From positions 153,143 to 217,142 of the IMG/VR virus record IMGVR_UViG_3300042895_001344: a stretch of 64,000 bases of DNA. The stretch is one strand, 5' to 3'. The notes beneath the pieces were generated by a model that searched no databases, was not told the DNA's origin, and worked only from the letters and a program-made list of their open reading frames with translations. Below, piece by piece: positions 503-60,672 of the stretch. The translations under genes and the position numbers were made by a program. Positions within the stretch are counted from its first letter, which is position 1; each line of letters starts with the position of its first letter.

Positions 503-510
503 TATAAATA
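503..510 (-). promoter_or_regulatory. TATTTATA putative late-promoter motif
   Basis: 21 nt upstream of the ATG at 481; recurrent motif (see findings). Confidence 0.5.
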
Positions 511-546
511 GTTTTATTTTTTGTCTATTACTTAGTATTTTTATTA

Positions 547-3525
547 TTAACTACCGAATGTTATTGATATTGGGTCGGCATATACAAATGGATTAGCCGA
601 TGTTACTGTTTGTGTGGCAGGTCCCGTTTGTATTGTAAAGATTCCGCCAATAGTATCAGCAAAGAACGTACCTGGTGTTGTACTTGTGTATGTTACAGTG
701 TTAGCACCTTGTGTTATAGATATTGTACCACCATTAGTTGCCAATTCAGTAAATTGAGTTGTGTAGTTGGTACCATTACTATCATCTAAATTGAAATAAA
801 TTTCATTAACACCGTTTGATTTATTTGGATTAAATGTTTCAGTTACTTCATTAGTTTCATTATTTCTTATTAAAAATATAGAATTACCATCTGATAACGG
901 TGGTTGTGCATCAAAAATACCTCCTTCATCACTATAGAAATACCACGCACCTATTCCTCCACCTATTGATGTTGGTGTGGGTGTCGGTGTTGGTCCTCCT
1001 AATCCTATACCTACAACGACATCAATCGAACCGCCAGACCATGTGTAAGTATATGTTCCATTAGTTAAACCTAAACTCGATAATGTTTGACCTGTAAATG
1101 TTTGACTACTTGAAATGTTCGCACCTGATGTGTATCCTGTTGGTACAATCAATAAGTATGGTGGTGCCATATTCATGATTACACCAAACGCCTGTCCAGT
1201 ACCTGAACTATGTGGTAATCCAGAACCACTTCCGAAATTACTTGGTACAGATGTGAATCCACTATATGAACTACCTGATGAACCACTAGCCCCACAAACA
1301 AATGTTGCATTACTAATACCTAAACCTCCATTTCCAAATGGTCCAGCACTTGATGATACTAAAGTTAATCCACTAAGGTCAACTGTTCCCGATGCAGACA
1401 TAACAACATTAGAACCTACTTCAGTTATAGTAACTGTCATTGGTGCCGAACCAGATGTTGGTGTTGGAGTTGGTGTACTTGTTGCCGGTAAAGGTGTTGC
1501 AGTACTTGTCGGTTCTGGTGTTGGTGTACTTGTTGCAGCTAAAGGTGTTGGTGTAGGTGTATCTGTTGGTACTCCTGTTGGTGCTGGTGTCGCCGTTGCA
1601 GGTTCAGGTGTACTTGTTGCCTCAGGTGTTGGTGTAGGTGTGTCTGTTGGAACGTTTGTTGGTTCTGTTGTAGACGTAGGTGTTGGAGTTGGTGTCGATT
1701 GACCTGAAACTAATATATCTATATAGAAAACCTCCCCAAATGTAAATGTAGAAACGGGCGAACTTTGTACTAATGATAATTTAGTTGAATCTAAAAAATA
1801 CGAACTATTACTACCGTCATATACCATGGCAATATTTGTACCTGAATATATTGCACTATTTCCATTTTGACATAATGTTACAGTAAATGAAGTACCTACT
1901 GCATTTCCGAAGTATGTTGTTTGGTCTGTTCCATCATTATCAATTTCATTAAAATATAATACCGAAGAATTAGTACCTAATATATTAACGAGATTTAATG
2001 CTGTTGCCGGCATTGTACTTGATATCCAAAGTGACTCACCTGAACTTGGTGTTGTTAATAAATTTGACAACACATAAGGTTTACCACTACATGATGCAAC
2101 TGTTGTTGGTGTAGGGGTTGGTGTTTCAGTAGGTGTCGGTGTTGGTGTTGCGGTTGATGAAACTACTGTTGGTGTAGGTGTTGGTGTCATTTCAGGGAAC
2201 ACAGCTTTTAATGTTGCTGTATCACCAGTAATAGTTACAATGGTGTTAGATGAATTAGGTACAGGTAAATTAACATTAGTACCCTCCCAATTTTGGAATA
2301 ACCCACTACCACTAAACGCAGTAATAGAATATTGTTGATTTTTAACAACACTGATTGTTGTATCTGATGTATATGTGACTCCACCGAATGAAATACCATC
2401 ATAACCCATAACTATATCAATAAATAACGACGCCATTTCTGGTGTTGGTGTTGGTGTAGCGGTTGGACCTGGTGTTGGTGTTGGTGTAGGTGTATTTGAT
2501 GGAATACAGTTAACAATATCCACAAATTGACTATTGGTAAACTGAGATAAGAAATAAAATCCACTACCATCGGTAAGAATGTAATACCCATCAAATAGTA
2601 ATGAAACTGTTTCATTTGAATTTGAACTTACGTAAACATAATCAAAAATTTCACCATCGACATAACCGATAATTGAATCCTGTGCGGAACAACTTGAATT
2701 CATTAAACAATCAAGTGCACTACAAGCGGTGGTTAAATCATTAAAAAATGGACCCGTATTATCGGTATTACCAATTATTGTAATTTGATATGGATGATTA
2801 ATTGGTTCATTCGTTGCCGTTGGTGTACTTGTTGCCGGTAAAGGTGTATCTGTTGGTACGGGAGTTGGTGTACTTGTTGCCGGTAAAGGTGTAGGAGTAT
2901 CAGTTGGTACCGATGTTGAATCTGGCGTTGGTGTAGGAGTTGGGGTTGTTGATGTAGATTCTAATAAAATATTATCCCCATTTTCTTGTAATAAACTATC
3001 ACCATTCTCTTGTAATAAACTATCACCTAAATTATCTGTCGGTGTTGGTGTAGGTGTTGCTGTAGCTGGTAACGGAGTTGGAGTACTAGTTGCCGGTAAA
3101 GGAGTAGGTGTTGCCGTTGGTAAATTTGTAGGTGTAGGGGTTGGTGTTGGTAAATCTTCACCATATGTTGTAAAATAACCGTTATTATTTAACCAAGTTT
3201 TAGCATCACTACCATTTGTAAATGGTTCTAAACCATCTGTTATTGGTAAAACGTTTAATAAATCTAATAAAGATTGTTCGGTTAAATCTGTTGATCTCCA
3301 AAAATTAATATAGGAATCTTCATCCACCGGTGTCGGATGATCTCCCGTTGGTACTTGGTTGGCAATAACATAACCTAACTCTTCATCGGGTCCCATCCAC
3401 CATTTAACCCCACCTGGATCTTGTGAATAATCTTGATCTGAAACACCTATTGCGATGTTTCCAATTTGTATTGTTCCGTCTATGGTGGTACCTGTGTTGT
3501 ATGCGAAGGGTCTTGTTGTTGCCAT
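547..3525 (-). CDS. 992-aa modular Pro/Thr-repeat fibre or decoration protein with a PEP-CTERM-protein-like beta domain
   Basis: Globular segments separated by several (TP)n linkers; LLQENGD repeat; domain starting VTITEVGSNVVMSASGTVDL; no signal peptide. Confidence 0.65.
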   Translation of the reverse strand: MATTRPFAYNTGTTIDGTIQIGNIAIGVSDQDYSQDPGGVKWWMGPDEELGYVIANQVPTGDHPTPVDEDSYINFWRSTDLTEQSLLDLLNVLPITDGLEPFTNGSDAKTWLNNNGYFTTYGEDLPTPTPTPTNLPTATPTPLPATSTPTPLPATATPTPTPTDNLGDSLLQENGDSLLQENGDNILLESTSTTPTPTPTPDSTSVPTDTPTPLPATSTPTPVPTDTPLPATSTPTATNEPINHPYQITIIGNTDNTGPFFNDLTTACSALDCLMNSSCSAQDSIIGYVDGEIFDYVYVSSNSNETVSLLFDGYYILTDGSGFYFLSQFTNSQFVDIVNCIPSNTPTPTPTPGPTATPTPTPEMASLFIDIVMGYDGISFGGVTYTSDTTISVVKNQQYSITAFSGSGLFQNWEGTNVNLPVPNSSNTIVTITGDTATLKAVFPEMTPTPTPTVVSSTATPTPTPTETPTPTPTTVASCSGKPYVLSNLLTTPSSGESLWISSTMPATALNLVNILGTNSSVLYFNEIDNDGTDQTTYFGNAVGTSFTVTLCQNGNSAIYSGTNIAMVYDGSNSSYFLDSTKLSLVQSSPVSTFTFGEVFYIDILVSGQSTPTPTPTSTTEPTNVPTDTPTPTPEATSTPEPATATPAPTGVPTDTPTPTPLAATSTPTPEPTSTATPLPATSTPTPTPTSGSAPMTVTITEVGSNVVMSASGTVDLSGLTLVSSSAGPFGNGGLGISNATFVCGASGSSGSSYSGFTSVPSNFGSGSGLPHSSGTGQAFGVIMNMAPPYLLIVPTGYTSGANISSSQTFTGQTLSSLGLTNGTYTYTWSGGSIDVVVGIGLGGPTPTPTPTSIGGGIGAWYFYSDEGGIFDAQPPLSDGNSIFLIRNNETNEVTETFNPNKSNGVNEIYFNLDDSNGTNYTTQFTELATNGGTISITQGANTVTYTSTTPGTFFADTIGGIFTIQTGPATQTVTSANPFVYADPISITFGS

Positions 3526-3532
3526 TATGTTA

Positions 3533-3540
3533 TATAAATA
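3533..3540 (-). promoter_or_regulatory. TATTTATA putative late-promoter motif
   Basis: 7 nt upstream of the ATG at 3525. Confidence 0.55.
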
Positions 3541-3567: not shown

Positions 3568-4989
3568 TTAGTGTAATCTTTCTATTGAAATAAAGTTATT
3601 AAGATAAGTGTCACCGATTATCAAAATAATTCTATATACTCTATTGTTTGTATCATCTCTTAAAATGTAGGTAGATGTATCACCTTGTCCAGTAAAGTTC
3701 CAATTAAACATTGATGCAGTTGCGGTTGTTGATAATGAAGTTGAACTAACACTTCCCGATGAAGAACCTCCAAAAGCTTGATAATGTGCCGAAATAAATC
3801 CTGTAACAGTATCAGATACTGTTGCGACACTCAACCCCCTATTACCGCTTGATGTTAGAGTTGCTTTAATATTATCTAATGTTACAAATGTTCCAGCATT
3901 TACTATTCCACTTGATTTACACGTCAATTCACCACTAACGCCGGCGGGTGACTTACTTAAATCAAGATATACACCTCTTGCACCTCCACCTTGTTCAAAA
4001 ATTCTTAATCTATTTTGATAAGAATCAATTGTAATTCCACTACCTGTAAGTGAGTTGTTTGTTTGTGATTTTGCTAATAAAATTTCTCCACCTTCATCAC
4101 CACTTCCAGTTCCAATTTGTAATGCAGTTGTTATTATATTCATTGAACCACTTATTATTACCGAACCTGTAATATTTTGAGTTGTTGAAATTGAACCTGT
4201 TGTAATTAAACCCGTATAACTAACAACTCCACTAGTTCCTGATGAACCATTAGAACCCGATGTTCCACTACTACCATTAGAACCTGATGTACCACTTGTA
4301 CCTGACCAACCATTTATTTGGGTTACCATCATAAAACACTGATTTGTGCTAAACCCACCAGTTGAATTACTAAAAGTACTTCTTAGGGCTACTTGTGTCG
4401 TTCCTGTTGTGACAATAATTGCCTCCGCCAATGGTTGCCAAGCTGCAGGAGCGACACTATTAACAACTATTACACCTGCTAGATTTCCTATTAAAGTATT
4501 ACTTGTGGTTACATTTATCCATTGATATTGTGTTTCAGCATTGTTTATATTATTTGCCAATGCAAAACTAGCATTAAGTTTATATGTCTTATTTGCTGCT
4601 AAGGTTATAATACCCGTAGATTGATTATAAGATACCGAACCATTTGATATTGTGGTACCCGATAATATAAAATTATTTCCCGTTGATGGTATGGTTGCAG
4701 TTGATGGTGTAAAATATAACCAATCATTGTCTACGTAACCTGATGTTCCCGATGACCCTGAACTACCGTTTGAACCTGACGAACCCGAAGAACCGTTAGA
4801 CCCCGATGTTCCCGATGAACCGGCAGTTCCTGAAGAACCTAAATCAAGAAATGGTTGACTTGATACCAAATCTTCAATTGATATGCGATTTGATGTGTAC
4901 CCACTACCGCTGGTTGAGGATATCATTAATATATCATCAATTTTTACGGAACCCGTACTAGTTAATTCTGAAACTTTTATTAGTGCCAT
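3568..4989 (-). CDS. Tail-fibre-like protein with Gly-Ser-Ser collagen-like triplets
   Basis: Two G-X-X blocks (GSSGTSGSNGSSG...) flank a beta-rich domain; beta-rich C-terminal domain. Confidence 0.65.
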   Translation of the reverse strand: MALIKVSELTSTGSVKIDDILMISSTSGSGYTSNRISIEDLVSSQPFLDLGSSGTAGSSGTSGSNGSSGSSGSNGSSGSSGTSGYVDNDWLYFTPSTATIPSTGNNFILSGTTISNGSVSYNQSTGIITLAANKTYKLNASFALANNINNAETQYQWINVTTSNTLIGNLAGVIVVNSVAPAAWQPLAEAIIVTTGTTQVALRSTFSNSTGGFSTNQCFMMVTQINGWSGTSGTSGSNGSSGTSGSNGSSGTSGVVSYTGLITTGSISTTQNITGSVIISGSMNIITTALQIGTGSGDEGGEILLAKSQTNNSLTGSGITIDSYQNRLRIFEQGGGARGVYLDLSKSPAGVSGELTCKSSGIVNAGTFVTLDNIKATLTSSGNRGLSVATVSDTVTGFISAHYQAFGGSSSGSVSSTSLSTTATASMFNWNFTGQGDTSTYILRDDTNNRVYRIILIIGDTYLNNFISIERLH

Positions 4990-5013
4990 TTTTATTTATA
5001 TTTTTATAATTTT

Positions 5014-5362: not shown

Positions 5363-7090
5363 TTATATTGGTGTAGGGGTTGGAGTTGGTAAAGTATTCT
5401 GATCTACGAATCCAAAACAAACCGTACAATAGTTTTCTGTTTCAGTGTAATTAAAACTTACGCTACTTACCGTACCATCTATACGGATAATATTAAACCC
5501 TTCAATTCCTGTAAATTGAGTATATTGAGTTCCATTTACTGGGTTTTGGTATGTTGTATCTAGTTCCCAAATTGGTGTGAATGGTGCGGAAACGATAACC
5601 GGAACGGATGTAATTGAATTACCCACACTAGCAAAGGCAATCAAAGGATTTGTAACTGGTTGACTAAATGTTGCGGTAAACACACCCATCGATGTATTTC
5701 GTATTTGAGTTCCACTAACCGGAACATTATATTCTTGAGGGAACGTTGTACCCTCATACATACCTGAACTCTGTATTCCCATACCACCTACACTTTGTGT
5801 AACTGCAATAGTAATACCATTTTGACCTATACCTGATGCGGTTGAATCGGTAACTGAGTTAATAGTCATCCATTGAAATCCTAAACTTACAGGTGTTGCT
5901 GTAGGTGTAACAGTTGGCGTAGGAGTTGGACTTGGTGTCGATGTAGGAACCGGAGTTGGTGAAGGTGTTACTGTTGGTGTTGCCGTTGGTGGAACATATG
6001 CTCTCACGTCATCAACACAAGGTGCATTACATATTTCAAAAGTATATCCTGTTAATGTTCTAAAATTATGTTTAACGTGAATAAAATCTAATGGTTCTTC
6101 ATAATATAATGCCGATTTAATATTAAACCCACATGTTTTTGATGTATTACCAAAATAAGTGTAGTTATATCCTCCACCCCAAGATTGTATTAAAGTTTGT
6201 TCGTCTCTATATGACGGTATAATCTCTTCCCAATTAGTTTCGGTATAAATTAAATTACCATTTAAATAAAACTTTAAATCACCCAATCTCATATCTCTTT
6301 GTTCCGCCCATTTTTTATTTAATTCTTCAACATACTCAGTTGTAATTGTACCACCCGTAACCCAATCTTCTATTGTATTGGTAATTGTGTATCCTGTTGT
6401 GATTTGTGTTGATGTCATTGCGGTGACACCTGTTAATGGTTTAATAAATTCTACCGCATGTGGACCTCTAATTAAATTGTTAAATCCACCCACATTATCC
6501 AAATCACAATCTGTAAATTCTTTATATCTATTAAAAACTATCGTTAAATTAAAATCACTCGTATTTCCTGTTACACATAATACAGGTGTTTGACCATTTA
6601 AAAGACTATGTGTCTCAGTATAACCCGTAGTATTACAATAACCTGAATAATGATATGAAACCCACTTTACCCTACCATCATTTGTAAATTGAAATGATAA
6701 GTTATTATCCAAATAATTTGTATATGTAGTATCACCATCAACCCCGATATAGTAAAAAATCGTACCTCCAGACCAATTTACTGAGTTTCTATTGAATACA
6801 AAATCCAACGTCCAACCCTTTTCTGTTCTTCTTCTAACCGTAAAATCACAGGTATCTCCCGTGTAACGACTAGCAACCGGAACAACCCATGGTTTCTGAT
6901 CGTTTAAAGGTGTGGTTAAACAACTTGAGTCAATTGTAAGAGCACTATATGTGATTGGGGTAGTTAAATCTAACACATCTGTATCGTAATCAACCTCATT
7001 TGTGGTTAATTGATAGTCATAAAGTTCCGATGAATCTAACTTCAAATCCAATTTAGATCCGTAATAGTTTAAAATATTCTGTCTATTCAT
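5363..7090 (-). CDS. Structural protein with a lectin/LamG-like beta region and PT linker
   Basis: The ORF track starts at 7111, but the ATG at 7090 (MNRQNILNYYG) lies 5 nt after a TATTTATA motif; beta-rich sequence. Confidence 0.55.
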   Translation of the reverse strand: MNRQNILNYYGSKLDLKLDSSELYDYQLTTNEVDYDTDVLDLTTPITYSALTIDSSCLTTPLNDQKPWVVPVASRYTGDTCDFTVRRRTEKGWTLDFVFNRNSVNWSGGTIFYYIGVDGDTTYTNYLDNNLSFQFTNDGRVKWVSYHYSGYCNTTGYTETHSLLNGQTPVLCVTGNTSDFNLTIVFNRYKEFTDCDLDNVGGFNNLIRGPHAVEFIKPLTGVTAMTSTQITTGYTITNTIEDWVTGGTITTEYVEELNKKWAEQRDMRLGDLKFYLNGNLIYTETNWEEIIPSYRDEQTLIQSWGGGYNYTYFGNTSKTCGFNIKSALYYEEPLDFIHVKHNFRTLTGYTFEICNAPCVDDVRAYVPPTATPTVTPSPTPVPTSTPSPTPTPTVTPTATPVSLGFQWMTINSVTDSTASGIGQNGITIAVTQSVGGMGIQSSGMYEGTTFPQEYNVPVSGTQIRNTSMGVFTATFSQPVTNPLIAFASVGNSITSVPVIVSAPFTPIWELDTTYQNPVNGTQYTQFTGIEGFNIIRIDGTVSSVSFNYTETENYCTVCFGFVDQNTLPTPTPTPI

Positions 7091-7095
7091 TATAA

Positions 7096-7128
7096 TATAA
7101 ATATCTTTCATAACATTTGATATTTATA
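7096..7128. promoter_or_regulatory. Back-to-back divergent TATTTATA motifs (7096-7103 minus, 7121-7128 plus)
   Basis: Each copy points toward its own divergent gene at the strand switch. Confidence 0.6.
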
Positions 7129-7143
7129 TAAAAGTCTATTTAG

Positions 7144-7893
7144 ATGAATAATTTTATAAAACAGGTAATTGAGGAGAAATTTGCTTCAAAAGCACAACAA
7201 AGGTTCTTCTACGCTAAGGCGAATGAAAAGGGTAAACCCAAGAAAGAAAAGAAGAAATGGTCTAAATGGGCTAAGGAGTTCTCCGATAAAACAGATTATG
7301 ATGAAATCCCCGATAAAGTAGAGAAAGAGGAAGAAGTAGATGAAATCGTGGACGGTGCCGGTAATTTTGCTAAAAGTAAAAAACCAACTAACTCAAGAGC
7401 TGAAGTAACATCAAATTCAACAACTGATGAATTTGTATTAACAGGAGCGGGTCAATCGTCTATATCACCAAAATTAGGTATGGGTTTTAGAAGATATTGG
7501 GGTGAGTCTGATATGAGTAAAGCATTAGGTGCTGAAGATACAATTATGGATGATGCTAATTATGAAGAAGCTAAAAAGAAATTTATTGAGTTGGGTGTAA
7601 CTGACCCAAAGGAATTGGAAGATAGATTAGGACAAATGGGATATGATCCAAAATTACCAGACGATAAGGTGAGATTGGTAGAAAACCCTAAAAAATTCAT
7701 GGAAGAATACATAGATAATCTTTTAAAACAAAAAGGAAAAGATAATGATGTATTACCCAAAGAAGAAGAGGTTGAGGAGATTGAAATCAATCCAATAGTT
7801 GTAAAACAAATAAAATCACTTAAAAATAGTATGAAAACTTATGGTCTTAAACCAGACCATATTTTGAAAGGACTTAAAGACGATAATGAATAA
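7144..7893 (+). CDS. Hypothetical protein, probable virion/internal head protein
   Basis: 249-aa ORF after the motif; N-terminal IKQVIEE and KFASKAQQRFFYA segment. Confidence 0.6.
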   Translation: MNNFIKQVIEEKFASKAQQRFFYAKANEKGKPKKEKKKWSKWAKEFSDKTDYDEIPDKVEKEEEVDEIVDGAGNFAKSKKPTNSRAEVTSNSTTDEFVLTGAGQSSISPKLGMGFRRYWGESDMSKALGAEDTIMDDANYEEAKKKFIELGVTDPKELEDRLGQMGYDPKLPDDKVRLVENPKKFMEEYIDNLLKQKGKDNDVLPKEEEVEEIEINPIVVKQIKSLKNSMKTYGLKPDHILKGLKDDNE

Positions 7894-8377
7894 AGAGTTA
7901 AAAAATAGGGACTTTGATTTACCACAGAACATTTTAGATAAGATCAACCACACGGTTACAGGTCTTAACGGTCAAAATGTGCATGGGGTAATGAGAGCAA
8001 AAAAACTTTTAACCGATAAAAAAGTAACATATGGTCAACTTAAACGTATTATTCATGACATACAAGGTATGGATAAAGTTGCTGATAAAATTAGGTATGA
8101 CTTGGCTGGTGGTGATTTAATGGATACGTGGTCAAAACAATATCTTCAGGGTGAGAGAGATTTAATTCAAAATAGAAAAGAAGGTAGAAAACAGGCTGAT
8201 GATATTTCAAGTACAACGGGAGAAAGAAAAAATAGTTTCTTAACGAAACATACAAAAAAATCAAGTTGGTTACCGTCATTTAAATTTAATTCTAATTCAG
8301 AAAAAAATTCAGTGGCGTCAATAAAATTAACAGGTTTATTTGAACAAGTTAATAGAATAAAAAAATTAATGTTATAA
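7886..8377 (+). CDS. Hypothetical protein ending in LFEQVNRIKKLML
   Basis: ORF coupled to both neighbours. Confidence 0.7.
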   Translation: MNKELKNRDFDLPQNILDKINHTVTGLNGQNVHGVMRAKKLLTDKKVTYGQLKRIIHDIQGMDKVADKIRYDLAGGDLMDTWSKQYLQGERDLIQNRKEGRKQADDISSTTGERKNSFLTKHTKKSSWLPSFKFNSNSEKNSVASIKLTGLFEQVNRIKKLML

Positions 8378-8378
8378 T

Positions 8379-9071
8379 ATGGCAACAAAATTAGATCAAA
8401 TATCAGAACAGTTTAGAAAAGAATCTATTACAAGAAATTCTTATAACGAAAAGAATTTATATAATAGTCAAAATATTAATGCATTATCTAACGGAGATGA
8501 AAAAGGTAAAGGTCAAATTGGTGACAGCGATAAAATCGGTTCAACCACTGACATTCAAAATAGAATTTCAAGTTTAGGTAGAAACACTTACAATGAAAAT
8601 AATCAATATAGTTTAACTAATCCAAATGCATTAGCAGATGGAGATGAAAAAGGAAGAGGTCAAAAAGAAGATAATGTTGCAATTGGAACATCTGTAGATA
8701 TTGCAAATAGAAATTTATTATTAAGTAAAAACACATATAAATTAAATAATAAATATGGTGTTAACAATCCTAATGCAATGTCCGACGGTGATGAAAAAGG
8801 TAAGGGACAAAAAGGTGAAACAGGTGAGGTTGGTTCAAGAACTGACGTGTTAAAAAGAACTGAAAATTTAGTAAAAAATAAGTTTAATAAAAAGAATTTA
8901 TATAATAGTACAAATCCTGATGCAATTTCTGACGGAGATGAAAATGGTAAAGGACCTAAAGATGAAAATGGAACTGTTGGTTCTAAAACTGATATTTTAA
9001 AAAGAACCGAAAATACTGGTAAGAATAGTTATAACTCTAAAAAAGAATATAATAGACATCCAACAGAATAA
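8379..9071 (+). CDS. Protein of four tandem 49-aa repeats (NPNA.SDGDEKG.G)
   Basis: Repeats visible in the translation. Confidence 0.8.
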   Translation: MATKLDQISEQFRKESITRNSYNEKNLYNSQNINALSNGDEKGKGQIGDSDKIGSTTDIQNRISSLGRNTYNENNQYSLTNPNALADGDEKGRGQKEDNVAIGTSVDIANRNLLLSKNTYKLNNKYGVNNPNAMSDGDEKGKGQKGETGEVGSRTDVLKRTENLVKNKFNKKNLYNSTNPDAISDGDENGKGPKDENGTVGSKTDILKRTENTGKNSYNSKKEYNRHPTE

Positions 9072-9820
9072 TGAGTTTTACAAATACAATCTTCAAAATA
9101 CTTGAAGAACAAAATATTTTAAGGACATCAAAAACTAAACCTATAGTTGATTCAATCAAAAATAGGAATAAGATTTCTTTTTTTTATACTGGTCCAAGAA
9201 AACCTGCAAAAGATAGTGTTAAACCTGGTAAAAGAATTGATGCCGAAGCAGTGGCTTTAGGGTTAAGTAAAAGAGGTAATTTAGTTATTCGTGCATATGT
9301 CCAACCACCTTCAGTATCCAAAAAAGGATTTGATAAAACAGGTTGGAGAACTTTTATGGTTAGTAGAATGAGTGATTTAAGAATTAGCGATGAAAAATTT
9401 GATCAGAAGAGACCCGACTATAAAGAAGGTGATGATAAATCAATGAGTGTTACTTACGTAACAACAGATTGGACAAATAAACCTGAGGTTAAGAAACCAA
9501 GGATTGTTAAACCAAAACCAAGTGTCCCTTCGGCAACTGCAACAACTCAATCAACTCCAAGTGTTGACCCGACAACAACAACTACACCTGAGGAACCAAA
9601 AACAACAGAACTACCACAACCAAAAACTCAAACTAAACCTGAGAAAGTTGTACCAAAACCTGAACCAACAAAAACAGAACCTGAAACAACAGAACCTAAA
9701 ACACAAGAATTACCTCAACCAAAACAAACAGAAAAACCAGTTGCAAATCCTGAAGAGGATGAGGAAAATAAAAATTTACAAGAAAGTATTAAAAATATTA
9801 AGCGTTTAATGTTTTCTTAA
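9071..9820 (+). CDS. WYL-like domain protein with Pro/Thr/Lys/Glu tail
   Basis: ISFFYTG...G.R..EAVALG...LVIRAYV...GWRTFMVSRM matches the WYL/SH3-like pattern. Confidence 0.65.
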   Translation: MSFTNTIFKILEEQNILRTSKTKPIVDSIKNRNKISFFYTGPRKPAKDSVKPGKRIDAEAVALGLSKRGNLVIRAYVQPPSVSKKGFDKTGWRTFMVSRMSDLRISDEKFDQKRPDYKEGDDKSMSVTYVTTDWTNKPEVKKPRIVKPKPSVPSATATTQSTPSVDPTTTTTPEEPKTTELPQPKTQTKPEKVVPKPEPTKTEPETTEPKTQELPQPKQTEKPVANPEEDEENKNLQESIKNIKRLMFS

Positions 9821-9853
9821 AATAGTTTATTATAATATAAAATATTTATTAAC

Positions 9854-10423
9854 ATGTCACAACAAGGATCAATATCATCTAACGATTTAATGAAAAAGTT
9901 AGTACAAGCAAAAAAAGTAATGAATAAAGTTGATGGTGGAAATTATGAAAGAGGTCATGTTAATAGTGAAATGTTAAGATCTGATCCTTCAGAATTAATG
10001 GAAATGCAAACACCTCAACAACCTAATACAAGACCTGTGGGTGGTAATATGAGTATTGATAAAATACAAAATTCAAAATTACCTGACGCAATTAAAAAAG
10101 CAATGATGGAAAACCCAATTCAACAAATTTCTTTAAATGATACTTTAGATATGGATTTCGTTAAAGGAGCAAAACGTTTAATGGAACAAGAAGGTGTTGC
10201 AACAAGACCGTCGGCACAACCAAAACAAACTATTGTTAATAATAATATTGACATGAACGCAATCGCAGTTCTTATTGAAAATACAGTTCGTAAAGTAATG
10301 GATGAAAAATTAAATCAAATCCTTACAGCATCCACAACATCATCTATTAATGAAAATTTAGTACTGAAGGTGGGAGACTCTATTTTCAAGGGTAAAATTA
10401 CAGGAGTAAATAAAGCCAAGTAA
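9854..10423 (+). CDS. Hypothetical protein
   Basis: 189-aa ORF, TATTTATT upstream. Confidence 0.7.
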   Translation: MSQQGSISSNDLMKKLVQAKKVMNKVDGGNYERGHVNSEMLRSDPSELMEMQTPQQPNTRPVGGNMSIDKIQNSKLPDAIKKAMMENPIQQISLNDTLDMDFVKGAKRLMEQEGVATRPSAQPKQTIVNNNIDMNAIAVLIENTVRKVMDEKLNQILTASTTSSINENLVLKVGDSIFKGKITGVNKAK

Positions 10424-10475
10424 TTTTGTTTTTCCAATTTTTTTAGTTATATTTTAGACATATAAGTTAATTTAA

Positions 10476-11696: not shown

Positions 11697-11702
11697 AACA
11701 AC

Positions 11703-11939
11703 ATGCATTATTTAGTTACAATCGGTTATGAGACCGAACAAATGGACAGAGAAGGAAACCCTCGTGTTAAAAAGTACAAGTACATTATCGAGGCAGAATC
11801 AGTAGAAGAAGCAACCATTGTTGCATCAAAATACAGAGCTGGTGACACACGTTCAAGTGAAAGTATTTCAGTTGCAAAAATGGCAATTGAATGTATCATT
11901 GACAGTAAGAACACACCCGAGTATTACAAAAGTAAATAA
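11703..11939 (+). CDS. Hypothetical protein
   Basis: 78-aa ORF in operon. Confidence 0.7.
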   Translation: MHYLVTIGYETEQMDREGNPRVKKYKYIIEAESVEEATIVASKYRAGDTRSSESISVAKMAIECIIDSKNTPEYYKSK

Positions 11940-11958
11940 CAATTAAACACCAACTGAT

Positions 11959-12174: not shown

Positions 12175-12175
12175 A

Positions 12176-12808: not shown

Positions 12809-12811
12809 TGA

Positions 12812-12819
12812 TATTTATA
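12812..12819 (+). promoter_or_regulatory. TATTTATA putative late-promoter motif
   Basis: 32 nt upstream of phoH. Confidence 0.5.
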
Positions 12820-12851
12820 AACAATAAACGGATCATTTAAAACTATCAACT

Positions 12852-13583: not shown

Positions 13584-13620
13584 TATTTACTTATAATTCA
13601 ATTCGTTGTATATTTTTACA

Positions 13621-15537: not shown

Positions 15538-15538
15538 T

Positions 15539-16318
15539 ATGAAAAATATAACAGTAATTTTACCTGTACATAGACTAGATGGCATTTATAAAGAAATGTT
15601 AGATAATTCGATTAAATCAGTTGAACAATTTCATAATGATGTTAACTTATCAATAGTATGTCCACCATCATTAAAAACAGAATTAGTAAATTTATCTGAA
15701 GTTTTAGAAATTGAAGTTATTTCTAACAATGGTAAAACTGATTTTTGTTCTCAAGTAAATTTGGGAATTGAAAAATGTAAAACTGAATGGTTTAGTATTT
15801 TAGAAATTGATGATGAGTATAAATCAATTTGGTTAAAATCAACAAACGAATATGTTAAAACATATACCGATGTTGATGTATTTTTACCTGTAGTTAAGGA
15901 TATTAATGTTGATGGAAATTTTGTAAGTTTTACAAATGAATCAACTTGGGCATATGGGTTTACTGAAAAACAAGGTATATTGGATAATGAAGTTTTATTA
16001 GATTTTCAAAACTATCAAATTAGTGGTGGACTTTATAAAACACAAGTTATTAAAGATAATGGTTCATTAAAAGAAAATATCAAGTTAACATTTGGTTATG
16101 AGTTTTTATTAAGATTAACACATAACAATATTAAGGTTATGACCGTACCAAGAGTAGGATATCAACACTTAAACTTTAGAGAGGATTCGTTATTTTGGTC
16201 ATATAAAAACGATGAAACTAATAAGATTAGTGAAGATGAGGCTAAGTTTTGGTTGGAGACGGCAAAGAAGGAATTTTTCTTTAAAAATAAACGAGATGTA
16301 AATTATGAAATAGCTTAA
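15539..16318 (+). CDS. GT2 (GT-A) glycosyltransferase
   Basis: ITVILPV, QVNLGIEKCKTEWFSILEIDDEY. Confidence 0.8.
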   Translation: MKNITVILPVHRLDGIYKEMLDNSIKSVEQFHNDVNLSIVCPPSLKTELVNLSEVLEIEVISNNGKTDFCSQVNLGIEKCKTEWFSILEIDDEYKSIWLKSTNEYVKTYTDVDVFLPVVKDINVDGNFVSFTNESTWAYGFTEKQGILDNEVLLDFQNYQISGGLYKTQVIKDNGSLKENIKLTFGYEFLLRLTHNNIKVMTVPRVGYQHLNFREDSLFWSYKNDETNKISEDEAKFWLETAKKEFFFKNKRDVNYEIA

Positions 16319-17019
16319 TGCCAAGACCAAGAACCCAAAAAATATATTTTGGGGAGGATCAAGAGAAGGCGGTAGTCAATTACTTAGAAAGTACTGATGA
16401 AGCAGAAAAAAATAAGATATTCAATGAATATTTACGTGAACCCCTAATTATAATGGTCGAATCAATTATTCGACGTTATAAACTTTATAGAAAAGATATG
16501 GAATTTGAAGAGATTCATACAGACACCATGTCCTTTCTTATAACAAAGATCAACAAGTTTGATCATACCAAGAATACCAAAGCATATTCTTATTTTGGTA
16601 CCATCTGTAAAAACTACCTTATGGGTGCAATACAGAAGGATACAAAGGAACAAAACAGACAAGTATCGTATGATGATATATCCTCAGATTTTGAAGATAG
16701 TAAAGACCTTTCATATGTAATTGACGAATTCGTAGTTGATTACGCATCTGTAATTGTAAAACTTACCGTGGATTTAGAAAATTTTGTGGAAAAGGAAAAA
16801 AACCTATCTGATAATGAAAGAAAACTGGGTTATGCATTATTAGAAATTTTTGGAAACTTCGATAAGATATTTCAAGTAGGAGATGGTAATAAATTCAATA
16901 AGAACCTCATTTTACTCTCTTTAAGAGAAATGACCTCATTATCAACAAAAGAGATTAGAGTCTCCCTAAAACGTTACAAGAAATTATATGACGGTATTTT
17001 GGGTGGGTTTTTAGAATAA
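16318..17019 (+). CDS. Sigma-70-like factor, probable late sigma (gp55 analogue)
   Basis: Region-2-like EEIHTDTMSFLITKINKFDHTKNTKAYSYFGTICKNYL. Confidence 0.6.
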   Translation: MPRPRTQKIYFGEDQEKAVVNYLESTDEAEKNKIFNEYLREPLIIMVESIIRRYKLYRKDMEFEEIHTDTMSFLITKINKFDHTKNTKAYSYFGTICKNYLMGAIQKDTKEQNRQVSYDDISSDFEDSKDLSYVIDEFVVDYASVIVKLTVDLENFVEKEKNLSDNERKLGYALLEIFGNFDKIFQVGDGNKFNKNLILLSLREMTSLSTKEIRVSLKRYKKLYDGILGGFLE

Positions 17020-17033
17020 ATCTATTTATTGAT

Positions 17034-21071: not shown

Positions 21072-21079
21072 TATTTATA
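21072..21079 (+). promoter_or_regulatory. TATTTATA putative late-promoter motif
   Basis: 11 nt upstream of the ATG at 21091. Confidence 0.55.
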
Positions 21080-22515: not shown

Positions 22516-22523
22516 TATTTATA
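22516..22523 (+). promoter_or_regulatory. TATTTATA putative late-promoter motif
   Basis: 4 nt upstream of the ATG at 22528. Confidence 0.55.
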
Positions 22524-28467: not shown

Positions 28468-28475
28468 TATAAATA
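28468..28475 (-). promoter_or_regulatory. TATTTATA putative late-promoter motif
   Basis: 27 nt upstream of the scaffold ATG. Confidence 0.55.
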
Positions 28476-29229: not shown

Positions 29230-29237
29230 TATAAATA
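29230..29237 (-). promoter_or_regulatory. TATTTATA putative late-promoter motif
   Basis: 16 nt upstream of the gp21 ATG. Confidence 0.55.
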
Positions 29238-29677: not shown

Positions 29678-29779
29678 TAATATTTCATATTATTATTTCT
29701 TATGGTGTTTTTAAAAAATAACTAAAATACTTGGAATAACCAAAAATAATTTCATATATTTGTTGTATATTTATTATAT

Positions 29780-32549: not shown

Positions 32550-32557
32550 TATAAATA
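32550..32557 (-). promoter_or_regulatory. TATTTATA putative late-promoter motif
   Basis: 4 nt upstream of the portal ATG. Confidence 0.55.
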
Positions 32558-34383: not shown

Positions 34384-34391
34384 TATAAATA
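34384..34391 (-). promoter_or_regulatory. TATTTATA putative late-promoter motif
   Basis: 5 nt upstream of the terminase ATG, just after a terminator. Confidence 0.55.
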
Positions 34392-38385: not shown

Positions 38386-38456
38386 TTTATAAAATTGTTA
38401 AGATATACTTATTCTTATCCTATAAATACATAGATATATAGAAAAATTAGGTATAA

Positions 38457-43058: not shown

Positions 43059-43094
43059 ATAGTTGACTTTTTATTAAAGTTATATATATTTATA

Positions 43095-49415: not shown

Positions 49416-49591
49416 ACTGTTTCAGTTAAAATTGTGGTTAGTAAATAACCGGTTATTATTGGGAATGGTGAAAATATTAAAAAAAAGAACAATAACCTCC
49501 AAACCAATGGATCAACATTTGTACGGTGACTTAAACCACTACATACACCAAAAAAAACTTTGTCGTCGTGAACTCTTTTAAACTTTTTCAT
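49412..49591 (-). CDS. pspC: PspC-domain membrane protein (59 aa, absent from the ORF track)
   Basis: Hand translation MKKFKRVHDDKVFFGVCSGLSHRTNVDPLVWRLLFFFLIFSPFPIITGYLLTTILTETV; TGA overlaps the next ATG; TATTTATA 4 nt upstream. Confidence 0.85.
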   Translation of the reverse strand: MKKFKRVHDDKVFFGVCSGLSHRTNVDPLVWRLLFFFLIFSPFPIITGYLLTTILTETV

Positions 49592-49595: not shown

Positions 49596-49603
49596 TATAA
49601 ATA
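49596..49603 (-). promoter_or_regulatory. TATTTATA putative late-promoter motif
   Basis: Just after a terminator and before pspC. Confidence 0.55.
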
Positions 49604-49607: not shown

Positions 49608-49631
49608 AAAAGGGGTTATAAAACCCCTTTT
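49608..49631 (-). terminator. Intrinsic terminator
   Basis: AAAAGGGGTT-4 nt-AACCCCTTTT. Confidence 0.75.
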
Positions 49632-51594: not shown

Positions 51595-52668
51595 TTATTG
51601 TGTTTTTGTTTTAGATTGATCACCCTTCTTTAAAAATATATCAAATATTGTTTTAGGACTGTATTCTACAAGTAATATTAAACCCTTCCTCAACGTAGAG
51701 TTTTTTACAACGTGATTTAAAATATCTTTAATAACCTCTTTAATGGCGAAATTTTTAGTGTCAAAATATGTTCCATCAAAATATCTTGGACTTGTTCCCT
51801 CACCACCTGGTGAACCGTGATGAGCACCTATAGAGGTACGCCAATAATCAGCATGATTTTGCCATTCAGGAACTGAAACCAATTCAGGTGAATCAAAAAA
51901 TAAATTCCACGATAATACATTACCCTTTTGTAACATATTACCAGTACCTAAGTTAAAAAGATTTAAAAAGTATTGATTAAACTTATCTAATTTGTGATCA
52001 CTTGTTGTTACCATTCCTCCTATTTCTACATTGATATGTCCTGTACTATATGCTTCTTCCTTTATTGCAAATTCAGGATTTTTAAATCTTGGTGATAAAC
52101 CCTTTCCGAGTTGAAATATAGGTTCTTTAGGATTTCCTGGTAGATGTGTTAAAACACGAATAGCATTTTCTTTGTTGATAGGATACTTACGAGAACTGTA
52201 TTTTAATAATGGCCAAATTGCTCTTAATAGACCACCTTGATTTTCACCTGGTGTTAACCAAATTTTTCCCTCAACCATCATATCCGCAGCAATTTCCTTT
52301 GTGTCTTCATTAACCCATCCTCTTTGTCCCGTAACTGTTACTTCCACATTGATACAAATCTCATCTCCAATCCACATCCCTTGTTGAGGACAGATTATGG
52401 AATAAATTCTACCTTCATTGGTATATCCTATTCTTGAAATATAAGGAGCAAATTGTACATAACAACGTTTTGGGTCTTTTTCCCCATTTAGGGTATTCCA
52501 ACTAAACATTGGCCATTTAACACCCCATTGTCTTTGTAGTAAATTAATGTTATCCATATTACCCAACATAGGTAATGAGGTTAAATCTGTGGTAGGATAT
52601 AGCATTTTCTTTTGTTTTTCAGATGGAAAACCACCTTGCCATCCCGTAGGAATTTGTTCGTTTGTCAT
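51595..52668 (-). CDS. Hypothetical protein
   Basis: 357-aa ORF; TATTTATA at 52679-52686 upstream. Confidence 0.7.
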   Translation of the reverse strand: MTNEQIPTGWQGGFPSEKQKKMLYPTTDLTSLPMLGNMDNINLLQRQWGVKWPMFSWNTLNGEKDPKRCYVQFAPYISRIGYTNEGRIYSIICPQQGMWIGDEICINVEVTVTGQRGWVNEDTKEIAADMMVEGKIWLTPGENQGGLLRAIWPLLKYSSRKYPINKENAIRVLTHLPGNPKEPIFQLGKGLSPRFKNPEFAIKEEAYSTGHINVEIGGMVTTSDHKLDKFNQYFLNLFNLGTGNMLQKGNVLSWNLFFDSPELVSVPEWQNHADYWRTSIGAHHGSPGGEGTSPRYFDGTYFDTKNFAIKEVIKDILNHVVKNSTLRKGLILLVEYSPKTIFDIFLKKGDQSKTKTQ

Positions 52669-52691
52669 ATTCTTTTAATATAAATACACAA

Positions 52692-52716
52692 AAAAGGGAG
52701 TTTTTAACTCCCTTTT
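52692..52716 (-). terminator. Intrinsic terminator
   Basis: AAAAGGGAGTT-TTT-AACTCCCTTTT. Confidence 0.8.
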
Positions 52717-59927: not shown

Positions 59928-59929
59928 AG

Positions 59930-60577
59930 TTATTTAACAAATAATTTAGTTATTAATTTATCCGCCGATTTTTTTAAGGCGTTACTAAGTGACGTTTGAT
60001 TAAATTGACCTCCCTCATCAACAATTAATGTTGACATTGATATTTCTGAAGATGATTCTTCGACCATTATTTCCTTTTCTTTTTTACCATCCTTATATAA
60101 AGTTCCTTTCATACGAATGACAACTTCTTCTTCATTTTTGTGAAAAACAGAAATGTTCTTTTTTGTTGTAAGAACATCTAAATAAATGATTTGAACTTTT
60201 AATTTGTATGGGGCTGAAGGTGTTAAATCATAACCCTTTTCTTGTAAGAATTCTTCCAATGTATTTTTTACACCGAAAGCTAAATTTCTATTACCTGCCA
60301 ATTTACCCATCTTAACTTCATTGGTAACACTCTCCACCCAAATATGGTCTTCAGCCACATAGAATATATTTTCAGGTGAGTTCTTGAATGTACCATCAAT
60401 CCTCCACGAAATCCAATTTGAGATGTCTCTTGTTATTTCTCTTTGGCCTGAAAATTCCAAAACCGCCATGGATATACCGAATATCATTCCAAATATTACC
60501 CATGATATCGCAAAGTATAAAAAACCTAAAAAGATTTTTTCTTTAATATTAATTGATAGTGTTCTTAATTTTTCCAT
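59930..60577 (-). CDS. Membrane-anchored CsgG-like protein (paralog of 49849..50577)
   Basis: N-terminal TM helix; LAFGVKNTLEEFL; FNQTSLSNALKK. Confidence 0.55.
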   Translation of the reverse strand: MEKLRTLSINIKEKIFLGFLYFAISWVIFGMIFGISMAVLEFSGQREITRDISNWISWRIDGTFKNSPENIFYVAEDHIWVESVTNEVKMGKLAGNRNLAFGVKNTLEEFLQEKGYDLTPSAPYKLKVQIIYLDVLTTKKNISVFHKNEEEVVIRMKGTLYKDGKKEKEIMVEESSSEISMSTLIVDEGGQFNQTSLSNALKKSADKLITKLFVK

Positions 60578-60664
60578 ACTGTTCTGAGTTTACAATTCCC
60601 TCAGAACCACATATTAATATAATACATAATATCTTGAGAGAGATACGTTTATTTTTTGTCTGTC

Positions 60665-60672
60665 TATAAATA
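60665..60672 (-). promoter_or_regulatory. TATTTATA putative late-promoter motif heading the envelope operon
   Basis: 87 nt upstream of the ATG at 60577. Confidence 0.5.

What the first reader, a model, noticed from the sequence alone, without database searches (positions are those of the whole stretch)
503..60672. Genome-wide TATTTATA motif: the T4 late promoter in reverse orientation
Seen: TATTTATA in the sense orientation at 503, 3533, 7096, 7121, 12812, 21072, 22516, 28468, 29230, 32550, 34384, 38421, 43087, 49596, 52679 and 60665. TATTTATT variants lie at 9843, 17023, 29768 and 61641. They sit mostly 4-35 nt before start codons of structural genes, often just after terminators, and flip with gene strand. 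One opposite-orientation copy is at 4993-5000. Established: the T4 gp55 late promoter is TATAAATA, the exact reverse complement. Inference: this is a distinct late promoter. Copies only 4-5 nt from the ATG (portal, terminase, pspC) would give nearly leaderless mRNAs; alternatively the motif is an mRNA-level translation enhancer. The AT-rich background was not formally controlled.
Basis: partly seen in the sequence, partly recalled or inferred. Interest (0 to 1): 0.65.

Follow-up and report, generated by a model that had tools for sequence, protein, structure and literature searches.

The report
Late-gene promoter of a jumbo phage
An exact 8-letter DNA word, TATTTATA, sits just upstream of the virion genes of this large T4-like phage and its distant relatives and is most likely their late promoter, read by a phage sigma factor related to T4 gp55; it differs from the T4 word by two central letters rather than being a truly reversed copy.

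Summary
All 16 listed TATTTATA copies are at the stated coordinates. In the whole 217-kb record, 34 of 63 copies lie in the 3.9% of DNA that is non-coding. It occurs in sense orientation within 60 nt upstream of 29 genes, against 4-5.5 expected from AT-matched models; the reverse complement occurs 6 times, as expected by chance. The same analysis recovers TATAAATA as the top asymmetric word in T4. TATTTATA is also sense-enriched in a complete 336-kb relative (61 vs 13), Flavobacterium phage immuto (24 vs 6) and Mel-JY01 (13 vs 2), upstream of terminase, portal, protease, sheath and tube genes. ORF 16318-17019 is a gp55-like sigma factor: T4 gp55 is its best structural match among 48,161 chains. 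The late-promoter reading is therefore supported, but only by comparison, because no RNA data could be obtained. "Reverse orientation" is a formal coincidence: both words share TAT..ATA and differ only at positions 4-5, one of which sits in a gp55 base pocket whose residues differ here. Motif-to-ATG spacing peaks at 4 nt, matching Flavobacterium promoter-to-start geometry, so many late mRNAs are probably leaderless. The TATTTATT variants are not enriched, and one of them lies inside a host-type promoter.

The parts
503..510 (-). TATTTATA, 21 nt upstream of ORF 2-481 (-)
3533..3540 (-). TATTTATA, 7 nt upstream of the 992-aa ORF 547-3525 (-)
7096..7103 (-). TATTTATA, 5 nt upstream of the in-frame ATG at 7090 of ORF 5363-7090 (-). 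It is one half of a back-to-back divergent pair.
   Evidence: kept in 23 of 27 distinct relatives' upstream sequences
7121..7128 (+). TATTTATA, 15 nt upstream of ORF 7144-7893 (+). It is the other half of the divergent pair.
   Evidence: 28 of 29 relatives
12812..12819 (+). TATTTATA, 32 nt upstream of the TTG start of the PhoH-like gene 12852-13583. It heads the + strand run of genes that ends with the sigma gene.
16318..17019 (+). gp55-like sigma factor (233 aa), the proposed reader of the motif
   Evidence: phrog_234 E 1e-4; T4 gp55 chain 7d7c_F E 9e-4; hhalign of the family profile against T4 gp55 E 5.6e-5; AF2 model pLDDT 89.6; best structural match among 48,161 PDB chains is T4 gp55, Z 10.7
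17023..17030 (+). TATTTATT variant, 3 nt upstream of ORF 17034-17414, directly after the sigma gene. Probably a weak or decayed site.
   Evidence: Exact TATTTATA at this place in 13 of 49 relatives, in immuto and in three divergent contigs
21072..21079 (+). TATTTATA, 11 nt upstream of ORF 21091-22512
   Evidence: 28 of 48 relatives
22516..22523 (+). TATTTATA, 4 nt upstream of ORF 22528-23181
28468..28475 (-). TATTTATA, 27 nt upstream of ORF 27142-28440, which sits in the scaffold-gene position. The Gp23 major capsid gene 25362-27119 follows with no motif of its own.
   Evidence: (30 of 31 relatives)
29230..29237 (-). TATTTATA, 16 nt upstream of the prohead protease gene 28530-29213
   Evidence: 31 of 32 relatives
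32550..32557 (-). TATTTATA, 4 nt upstream of the portal gene 30704-32545
   Evidence: 43 of 45 distinct upstream sequences
34384..34391 (-). TATTTATA, 5 nt upstream of the large terminase gene 32600-34378, directly after the terminator hairpin 34397-34422
   Evidence: (35 of 40 relatives)
38421..38428 (-). TATTTATA, 35 nt upstream of ORF 37414-38385
   Evidence: 18 of 18 relatives; spacing 33-40
49596..49603 (-). TATTTATA, 4 nt upstream of the PspC-domain ORF 49412-49591, directly after the terminator 49608-49631
52679..52686 (-). TATTTATA, 10 nt upstream of ORF 51595-52668, directly after the terminator 52692-52716
43087..43094 (+). Intergenic TATTTATA with no start codon nearby, followed by a terminator-like hairpin at 43170-43194. 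Function uncertain.
60665..60672 (-). Intergenic TATTTATA, 87 nt upstream of ORF 59930-60577. Function uncertain.
4993..5000 (+). The one opposite-strand intergenic copy. On the - strand it reads TATAAATA, 3 nt upstream of the collagen-like tail-fibre gene 3568-4989. It may be a tolerated AA variant or a chance copy.
29755..29775 (+). A host-type -7 box (TATATTTG, 29755-29762; its TTG lies upstream at 29731), followed 5 nt later by the TATTTATT variant (29768-29775), 4 nt upstream of small ORF 29780-29971. Possible tandem host-type and late signals.
   Evidence: exact TATTTATA here in 8 of 37 relatives
61626..61655 (+). Host-type promoter (TTG, spacer, TATCTTTG) upstream of the tRNA cluster.

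Best explanation
TATTTATA is the core promoter of a phage-specific, probably late, transcription class. The phage is a distant T4-like jumbo myovirus. The record is a 65%-complete fragment, and close relatives reach 336 kb. The host is almost certainly a member of the Bacteroidota.

The phage relies on host RNA polymerase. Some genes carry host-type promoters (TTG, 17-21 nt, TAnnTTTG). The TATTTATA genes, which include the virion genes, are proposed to be read by host core polymerase carrying the phage gp55-like sigma encoded at 16318-17019. As in T4, the signal is one exact AT-only octamer with no -35-type partner.

It differs from T4's TATAAATA only at octamer positions 4 and 5. If the octamer is read as in T4, these are T4 positions -10 and -9. 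The two adenines that T4 gp55 buries in deep pockets (-12 and -8) are kept.

The octamer probably occupies the register of the Flavobacterium -7 box (-12 to -5). Transcription would then start 4-5 nt after it. The large class of sites 3-5 nt from the ATG would give leaderless mRNAs, and the remaining sites would give short A-rich leaders.

Shown: enrichment, polarity, position, conservation across distant relatives, and the sigma-like fold. Inferred: which protein reads the motif, the start site, the timing of expression and the leaderless status.
For: 1. Statistics. There are 29 sense-upstream copies against 4-5.5 expected. The reverse complement is at expectation. TATTTATA ranks first among the 56 same-composition words. 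34 of 63 copies lie in the 3.9% of DNA that is intergenic.
2. Only the exact octamer is enriched. There is no conserved upstream element, and the base before the octamer is almost never T. This matches the T4 late-promoter architecture (PMC2988020).
3. Positive control. The same script on T4 returns TATAAATA as the top asymmetric 8-mer, 21 sense and 5 antisense.
4. Independent lineages. Complete relative G001: 61 sense, 13 antisense. Flavobacterium phage immuto (sigma 27% identical): 24 vs 6, upstream of TerL, portal, sheath, tube, hub, tape measure and fibre genes. Mel-JY01: 13 vs 2. Three contigs with sigmas 33-35% identical each carry the octamer right after the sigma gene.
5. Within the IMG/VR relatives, the octamer is kept at the same genes (for example 43/45, 35/40, 31/32, 30/31, 18/18). 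It is absent in relatives of most genes that lack it in the window (0-4 copies), except where the window has a TATTTATT variant (8-13 copies). The spacer to the ATG changes length by indels.
6. Downstream genes include homologues of T4 late genes: TerL, portal, protease, the scaffold-position gene plus Gp23, sheath and gp15, plus tube in relative G001.
7. The factor. Sequence, profile and structure searches all point to gp55 or sigma domain 2. There is one copy per genome. No phage RNA polymerase was detected.
8. Pocket residues. T4 Y97 (the -12 pocket), R57 and F86 are kept. H95 of the -9 pocket is Tyr or Phe in this family (PMC7892883). This is the position where the motif differs.
9. Geometry. 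Spacing is bimodal with a sharp mode at 4 nt; 31 of 61 sites in G001 are at 3-7 nt. Host-type TAnnTTTG promoters in the same genome show the same 3-5 nt class. Flavobacterium -7 boxes lie 4-5 nt from the start site (PMC6847099).
10. Context. Back-to-back copies fill a 53-nt divergent intergenic region (7091-7143). Three sites directly follow terminators.
Against: - There is no transcript evidence of any kind.
- "Late" is inferred from gene content. At least one copy lies upstream of a primase-like gene, and many downstream genes have no known function.
- Homology of the sigma to gp55 is weak at sequence level (E 1e-3 to 6e-5). Helical folds give middling Z scores by chance.
- The T4 partners gp33 and gp45 were not found in the complete relative, so the activation mechanism may differ from T4.
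- The sigma gene itself sits downstream of a TATTTATA site. No earlier promoter for it was identified.
- About a quarter of exact copies lie inside genes and are presumably silent.
- Conservation flanking the sites in close relatives is also high (0.66-0.98 per column), so footprinting at that distance is not sharp.
Confidence: 0.75

Rival explanations
1. The octamer acts in the mRNA as a translation enhancer, for example an AU-rich site for ribosomal protein S1 in a host that lacks Shine-Dalgarno pairing.
For: It is AU-only and strand-specific, and it often lies within 20 nt of the start codon. Bacteroidota do not use Shine-Dalgarno sequences (PMC6847099).
Against: - Only the exact 8-mer is enriched, and no one-mismatch variant is. 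AU-rich enhancers are degenerate.
- Spacing runs from 3 to about 40 nt and drifts by indels between relatives. At 33-40 nt the word lies outside a ribosome footprint.
- Most genes lack the octamer and instead carry A-rich AATAAAA-type sequences.
- A host promoter element shows the same 3-5 nt spacing class.
- The word co-occurs with a gp55-like sigma in six lineages.
Confidence: 0.07
2. The octamer is an RNA processing site: a sequence-specific endoribonuclease cuts polycistronic transcripts just upstream of start codons.
For: It is strand-specific, intergenic, an exact word and close to start codons. Published 5'-end maps by primer extension cannot always tell processing from initiation (caveat in PMC2988020).
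Against: - Back-to-back copies occupy a 53-nt divergent intergenic region (7091-7143) that leaves no room for other promoters.
- Copies directly after strong terminators need a new start.
- No candidate nuclease was identified.
- The architecture and the accompanying sigma match a T4-type promoter.
Confidence: 0.06
3. The octamer is a promoter, but it is read by a host sigma factor (the housekeeping sigma or an alternative one), not by the phage gp55-like protein.
For: It matches the Flavobacterium -7 consensus TAHHTTTG at six of eight positions and appears to share its register (PMC6847099, PMC9723704). No binding experiment links the phage protein to the word.
Against: - The two mismatches fall on T-7 and G-5, which are nearly invariant in host promoters (PMC6847099).
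- There is no -33-type element.
- Genuine host-type promoters occur separately in the same genome.
- The word tracks the phage sigma family across hosts and lineages.
Confidence: 0.1
4. It is literally an inverted T4 late promoter: the T4-type word is read on the other strand and drives antisense transcription away from the adjacent genes.
For: The word is the exact reverse complement of TATAAATA (sequence identity only).
Against: - Antisense transcription would run into the upstream gene or terminator and would leave the virion genes without promoters.
- The tight 4-nt spacing to the downstream ATG has no meaning under this model.
- The relation follows automatically from a two-base change in a self-complementary frame.
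Confidence: 0.02

Closest known systems
Bacteriophage T4 late promoters (TATAAATA) read by gp55 with gp33 and the gp45 sliding clamp
   Same: - A single exact AT-only octamer and no -35 element.
- Tens of copies per genome, in either polarity, upstream of virion genes (T4: 50 sites, 32 perfect; PMC2988020).
- A small sigma-domain-2 protein of the gp55 type is encoded by the phage.
- Six of the eight letters are identical, including the adenines that T4 gp55 places in its deep -12 and -8 pockets (PMC7892883).
   Different: - The central two letters are TT, not AA. No T4-family consensus cited in the review has this (PMC2988020).
- The -9 pocket residue H95 is Tyr or Phe.
- The sigma carries an extra C-terminal helical domain (residues 142-233) that T4 gp55 lacks.
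- gp33 and gp45 were not detected.
- The octamer sits about 1 nt closer to the inferred start.
- Half of the sites abut the start codon, whereas T4 late mRNAs have Shine-Dalgarno leaders.
Bacteroidota housekeeping promoters (-33 TTTG / -7 TAnnTTTG)
   Same: - The element is the same length.
- It has the same apparent register relative to start codons.
- T-12, A-11, T-8 and T-6 are shared.
- Genuine examples occur in this phage.
   Different: - A replaces T at -7 and A replaces G at -5, two nearly invariant positions.
- There is no upstream TTG.
Leaderless mRNAs of bacteria and archaea
   Same: A promoter element at a fixed short distance from an ATG, so that the transcript would begin at or next to the start codon.
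   Different: - Leaderless mRNAs are about 5.5% of mRNAs in Flavobacterium psychrophilum (PMC9723704).
- In the complete relative, roughly half of the octamer-led genes are of this type (inferred, not measured).

Membership tests
T4-type late transcription system | Promoter is a single roughly 8-bp AT-rich -10-like element with no -35 element | tested here: met
   An alignment of 29 sites shows an invariant octamer and no conserved column from -30 to -2.
T4-type late transcription system | Consensus TATAAATA in the direction of transcription | tested here: not met
   The sense word is TATTTATA (29 against 6 in the record, 61 against 13 in G001). T4 run through the same script gives TATAAATA, 21 against 5.
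T4-type late transcription system | Phage encodes a gp55-family sigma (sigma domain 2 only) | tested here: met
   phrog_234; 7d7c_F gp55 E 9e-4; hhalign E 5.6e-5; top structural hit is gp55, Z 10.7. Caveat: the protein has an additional C-terminal domain.
T4-type late transcription system | Co-activator gp33 | tested here: inconclusive
   phrog_254 finds nothing in the record or in the complete relative. The protein is small and fast-evolving, so absence is not shown.
T4-type late transcription system | Sliding clamp gp45 as activator | tested here: inconclusive
   PF09116, PF02916 and PF00712 find nothing in G000 or G001. A divergent clamp cannot be excluded.
T4-type late transcription system | Sites precede late (virion and packaging) genes | tested here: met
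   TerL, portal, protease, the scaffold-position gene plus Gp23, sheath and gp15-like, plus tube in relative G001. The same holds in immuto.
T4-type late transcription system | Transcripts start a fixed distance downstream and appear late, dependent on replication | not testable with these tools
Bacteroidota sigma-A promoter | -7 box TAnnTTTG with nearly invariant T-7 and G-5 | tested here: not met
   The octamer has A at both positions (sequence; PMC6847099).
Bacteroidota sigma-A promoter | Upstream TTG / TTTG element 17-21 nt away | tested here: not met
   No conserved upstream column. Genuine TTG-spacer-TAnnTTTG promoters are found elsewhere in the genome.
mRNA translation enhancer / ribosome-binding element | Constrained distance to the start codon and tolerance of sequence variants | tested here: not met
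   Spacing is 3 to about 40 nt and varies by indels. Variants are not enriched.

The most novel reading that the evidence does not exclude
A very abundant, mostly uncultured clade of jumbo T4-like phages, probably infecting Bacteroidota, runs its late programme with a re-tuned gp55-type sigma. This sigma reads TATTTATA, may work without the gp33/gp45 clamp coupling that defines T4 late transcription, and places the promoter so close to the ATG that about half of the late transcription units are made as leaderless mRNAs. This would be a natural specificity switch at a gp55 base pocket (H95 to Tyr/Phe with A-to-T at the matching motif position), combined with a leaderless late-expression strategy not described for the T4 family.
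Probability: 0.35. Interest if true: 0.65.

Novelty: new variant of a known kind. Interest (0 to 1): 0.55.

Why it matters
- It would give the first promoter model for a large, environmentally abundant group of phages. The sigma family has at least 1,284 clusters at 50% identity. The model allows operon and timing prediction in their genomes.
- It offers a natural experiment on how gp55-type sigmas read individual bases: one pocket residue and one motif position appear to change together.
- The apparent lack of gp33 and gp45 asks whether clamp-coupled activation is really general in the T4 superfamily.
- The spacing data predict unusually frequent leaderless translation in a phylum where it is rare in the host.
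- It also corrects an attractive but empty idea. The "reversed T4 promoter" is a consequence of a self-complementary frame, not of inverted recognition.

Tried and rejected
- **Raw two-strand count in the window:** only weakly significant. Orientation and position had to be modelled.
- **One-mismatch variants:** no sense enrichment as a class. TATTTATT does rank among the more frequent words ending 3-7 nt from starts (6 genes). They remain possible weak sites.
- **Sigma-70-type promoter scan:** fewer matches than in shuffles. E. coli-type promoters are rejected as the organising signal.
- **Foldseek against the PDB:** sigma factors at the top but no hit below E 0.001. The exhaustive VIA-align search was needed.
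- **Family profile against PDB sequences:** housekeeping sigmas scored ahead of gp55. The protein is safely a sigma-domain-2 protein. "gp55-like" rests on the pairwise, hhalign and structural results.
- **gp33, gp45, beta clamp, multisubunit and T7-like RNA polymerase:** none found. The T7-like model rang in no control genome, so that negative is uninformative.
- **Divergent-junction census:** only 30 of 72 junction sides in G001 had a late or host-type box in the strict intergenic DNA. My crude ORF calls make this inconclusive.
- **Footprinting in the 80-100% identical relatives:** the flanks are also conserved. The distant relatives carry the argument instead.
- **Rhodothermus phage RM378:** no gp55 homologue detected by phmmer, so its related word could not be tied to a factor.
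- **Gene calls:** they come from a simple longest-ORF script, not a trained gene finder. Several starts had to be corrected by hand (7090; the TTG at 12852; the 59-aa PspC ORF).

Full report
**What the window is.** The 64-kb window is the last part of a single 217,142-bp IMG/VR virus record with 31.6% G+C. CheckV rates the record 65% complete. A close relative, G001, is 335,630 bp and rated 100% complete.

The phage is a distant T4-like myovirus. It has homologues of:
- T4 large terminase, portal, prohead protease, Gp23 capsid, sheath, tube and gp15;
- the gp41 helicase and gp61 primase;
- a family B DNA polymerase.

The nearest named phages are Microcystis phage Mel-JY01 (portal 42% identical) and Flavobacterium phage vB_FspM_immuto (37%). 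The group is very common in metagenomes: hundreds of IMG/VR contigs and at least 7,933 hits for one protein.

**Checking the observation.** Four more copies lie inside genes (19021, 19929, 35232, 58236).

Counted on both strands without regard to position, the window is only mildly enriched: 21 against 13.5 +/- 3.9. The real signal is oriented and positional.
- In the whole record, 34 of 63 copies lie in the 3.9% of DNA that is intergenic.
- In the 60 nt upstream of genes, read in the sense of the gene, the word occurs 29 times. Order 1-3 Markov models trained on those same AT-rich regions predict 3.9-5.5 (sd about 2.3; maximum 17 in 300 simulations).
- The reverse complement occurs 6 times against 6-9 expected.
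- TATTTATA is the commonest of the 56 words with the same base composition, whose mean is 5.5.
- The window alone gives 11 against 2.0 +/- 1.3. The sense-to-antisense split has binomial p = 1e-4.

As a positive control I ran the same script on phage T4. Its top asymmetric 8-mer is TATAAATA, 21 sense and 5 antisense.

**Anatomy of the signal.**
- Only the exact octamer is enriched. No one-mismatch variant shows a sense bias (TATTTATT 8 sense, 8 antisense).
- No upstream column between -30 and -2 is conserved.
- The base just before the octamer is T in only 1 of 29 sites.

This is the architecture of T4 late promoters: one tightly kept octamer and nothing at -35 (PMC2988020; 50 sites in T4, 32 of them perfect).

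The spacing from the octamer to the start codon is bimodal. In the complete relative, 31 of 61 sites lie 3-7 nt from the ATG, with a sharp mode at 4 nt. The rest spread over 10-42 nt.

In the window:
- portal (d=4), terminase (d=5), PspC (d=4), ORF 22528 (d=4) and ORF 5363-7090 (d=5) belong to the short class;
- three sites (34384, 49596, 52679) directly follow strong terminator hairpins;
- copies 7096 and 7121 sit back to back in a 53-nt divergent intergenic region.

**Comparative evidence.**
- Among IMG/VR relatives with 80-100% protein identity, the octamer is kept upstream of the same genes. Counts of distinct upstream sequences: portal 43/45, terminase 35/40, protease 31/32, ORF 27142 30/31, ORF 37414 18/18.
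- In most genes that lack the octamer in the window, relatives lack it too (0-4 copies). The exceptions are genes where the window has a TATTTATT variant (8-13 copies).
- The spacer to the ATG changes length by indels, for example 18-27, 13-20 and 33-40 nt. Flanking columns are also fairly conserved at this distance, so this is not a sharp footprint.
- The stronger test is distant relatives with unalignable intergenic DNA. Flavobacterium phage immuto has 24 sense against 6 antisense copies, upstream of terminase, portal, sheath, tube, baseplate hub, tape measure and fibre genes.
- Mel-JY01 has 13 against 2, with a slightly longer consensus.
- Three short metagenomic contigs, whose sigma-like proteins are only 33-35% identical to the window's, each carry the octamer in the gap right after that gene.
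- The window has the variant TATTTATT at that place (17023). Thirteen of 49 relatives have the exact word there.

**The proposed reader of the motif.** ORF 16318-17019 (233 aa) gives weak but convergent sequence matches:
- the PHROG late sigma family, E 1e-4;
- T4 gp55 in PDB entry 7d7c, E 9e-4;
- Pfam Sigma70_r2, E 1.3e-3, below the cut-off;
- phrog_234 in the six-frame genome search, E 5e-6, one copy per genome.

Its family is large: 1,284 clusters at 50% identity. A 41-member profile aligns to T4 gp55 with hhalign E 5.6e-5 and to domain 2 of housekeeping sigmas.

An AlphaFold model (pLDDT 89.6) was searched without pre-filtering against 48,161 PDB representatives. T4 gp55 is the top hit (Z 10.7, 116 residues). 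A run of sigma domain-2 structures follows. Z values near 10 are not decisive for helical proteins on their own, but the list is coherent and agrees with the sequence results.

Residues 142-233 form an extra helical domain that T4 gp55 lacks. It aligns weakly with a sigma-4 region (Z 5.6).

No multisubunit RNA polymerase was found. The T7-type search was uninformative, because its model matched no control genome. Together with the host-type promoters, this suggests the phage depends on the host enzyme.

**Why "reverse orientation" is not the right description.** TATAAATA and TATTTATA share the frame TAT..ATA, which is its own reverse complement. Any change of the central AA to TT therefore yields the reverse complement automatically. 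The two words differ at two positions.

In the T4 open complex, gp55 flips non-template bases -12, -9 and -8 into pockets (PMC7892883). With the octamer at -13 to -6 (PMC2988020), these are octamer positions 2, 5 and 6. Positions 2 and 6, the two deep-pocket adenines, are unchanged here. Position 5, in the shallow -9 pocket lined by N13 and H95, and position 4 are the ones that differ.

In all alignments:
- T4 Y97, R57 and F86 are matched by identical residues;
- H95 is matched by Tyr90, which is Phe in immuto and Mel-JY01;
- T99 is matched by Gly94;
- the partner of N13 depends on the alignment (Gly12 or Glu13) but is not Asn.

I read this as a specificity variant read in the normal direction. 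The residue-to-base link is an inference from weak alignments.

**Host-type promoters and geometry.** The genomes also contain clear Bacteroidota-type promoters: TTG, 17-21 nt, then TAnnTTTG. With TTTG as the upstream element, G001 has 16 sense against 3 antisense. Window examples are at 25279-25309 (-), 29731-29762, 44098-44128, 61626-61655 and 63909-63939.

[quoted passage not shown] They also give a second promoter class.

Some host-type boxes also lie 3-5 nt from an ATG. In Flavobacterium the -7 box occupies -12 to -5, with 4-5 nt to the start site (PMC6847099, PMC9723704). If TATTTATA sits in the same register, a 4-nt gap puts the first transcribed base on the A of the ATG. That explains the sharp mode and predicts leaderless mRNAs for about half of the octamer-led genes. 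Only about 5.5% of mRNAs are leaderless in Flavobacterium psychrophilum (PMC9723704).

Against the host consensus TAHHTTTG, the octamer differs at T-7 and G-5, which are nearly invariant in host promoters. Host sigma-A is therefore unlikely to use it.

**Rivals.**
- **Translation enhancer.** The exact-word requirement, the 3-40 nt range of spacing and the fact that most genes do without the word all argue against it.
- **RNA processing site.** This is hard to reconcile with back-to-back copies in a short divergent gap and with copies placed right after terminators.
- **Reading by a host sigma.** This cannot be excluded without biochemistry.
- **Literal inverted T4 promoter.** It would point transcription away from the genes it so precisely abuts.

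**Limits.**
- "Late" rests on gene content. One copy precedes a primase-like gene.
- gp33 and gp45 were not detected even in the complete relative. That may mean divergence or a different activation mechanism.
- Gene calls are from a simple script.
- The held literature contains no paper linking TATTTATA to a phage promoter. That is not proof of novelty.

**Verdict.** The late-promoter interpretation and the nominated sigma are supported by statistics, comparison and structure. The "reversed T4 promoter" framing and the variant list are not supported. I classify it as a new variant of a known kind, a T4-type late promoter and sigma pair with altered specificity. It carries a testable and less ordinary corollary: widespread leaderless late mRNAs.

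Noticed in passing
window 25279-25309 (-), 29731-29762 (+), 44098-44128 (+), 61626-61655 (+), 63909-63939 (+): Bacteroidota-type promoters (TTG, 17-21 nt, TAnnTTTG), often beginning TTGGAATAT. They point to a Bacteroidota host and form a second, probably early, promoter class. Some lie only 3-5 nt from an ATG.
   Followed up: partly
whole record, 60 nt upstream of genes: A-rich words of the AATAAAA type occur upstream of 58 genes in sense against 6 in antisense, and there are no Shine-Dalgarno sequences. This resembles the A-rich initiation regions of Flavobacteriia.
   Followed up: no
window 61694-62893: A cluster of five tRNA genes (Thr, Asn, Met, Ser, Glu) downstream of a host-type promoter.
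   Followed up: partly
window 43059-43514: An ORF-poor stretch with three terminator-like hairpins (43170-43194, 43385-43405, 43468-43489), a TATTTATA copy at 43087 and a TTGACT/TATATT pair. It may encode small RNAs. No Rfam family matches.
   Followed up: partly
Rhodothermus phage RM378 (L187-L193): A related word, TTATTTAAA, is the top asymmetric upstream 8-mer (27 against 11), with a spacing peak about 5-6 nt from start codons. No gp55 homologue was detectable by phmmer. A TATTTA core may be common to T4-like phages of Bacteroidota-related hosts.
   Followed up: partly
Flavobacterium phage immuto, record positions 120597, 131296, 145346 (L003): At three sites the octamer overlaps a T4-type word, reading TATTTATAAATA, so both versions are present 4 nt apart upstream of the portal gene and two other genes.
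   Followed up: no
window 16741-17019 (residues 142-233 of the sigma-like protein): An extra C-terminal helical domain absent from T4 gp55. It aligns weakly with a sigma-4 region (3mzy_A, Z 5.6), yet no -35-type element accompanies the octamer.
   Followed up: partly
window 7886-16318: A run of glycosyltransferase-like genes and a PhoH-like gene lies directly upstream of the sigma gene on the same strand. The only recognisable signal ahead of the sigma gene is the TATTTATA at 12812, so how the sigma is first expressed is unclear.
   Followed up: no
whole record G000 and relatives: The record is a 65%-complete fragment. Relatives reach 324-336 kb, and the group is extremely abundant in the metagenome collections.
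   Followed up: partly
window 4993-5000: On the - strand this copy reads TATAAATA, 3 nt upstream of the collagen-like tail-fibre gene 3568-4989. This is the same tight spacing as the main class, so the factor may tolerate AA at the centre. No counterpart was found in the complete relative.
   Followed up: partly
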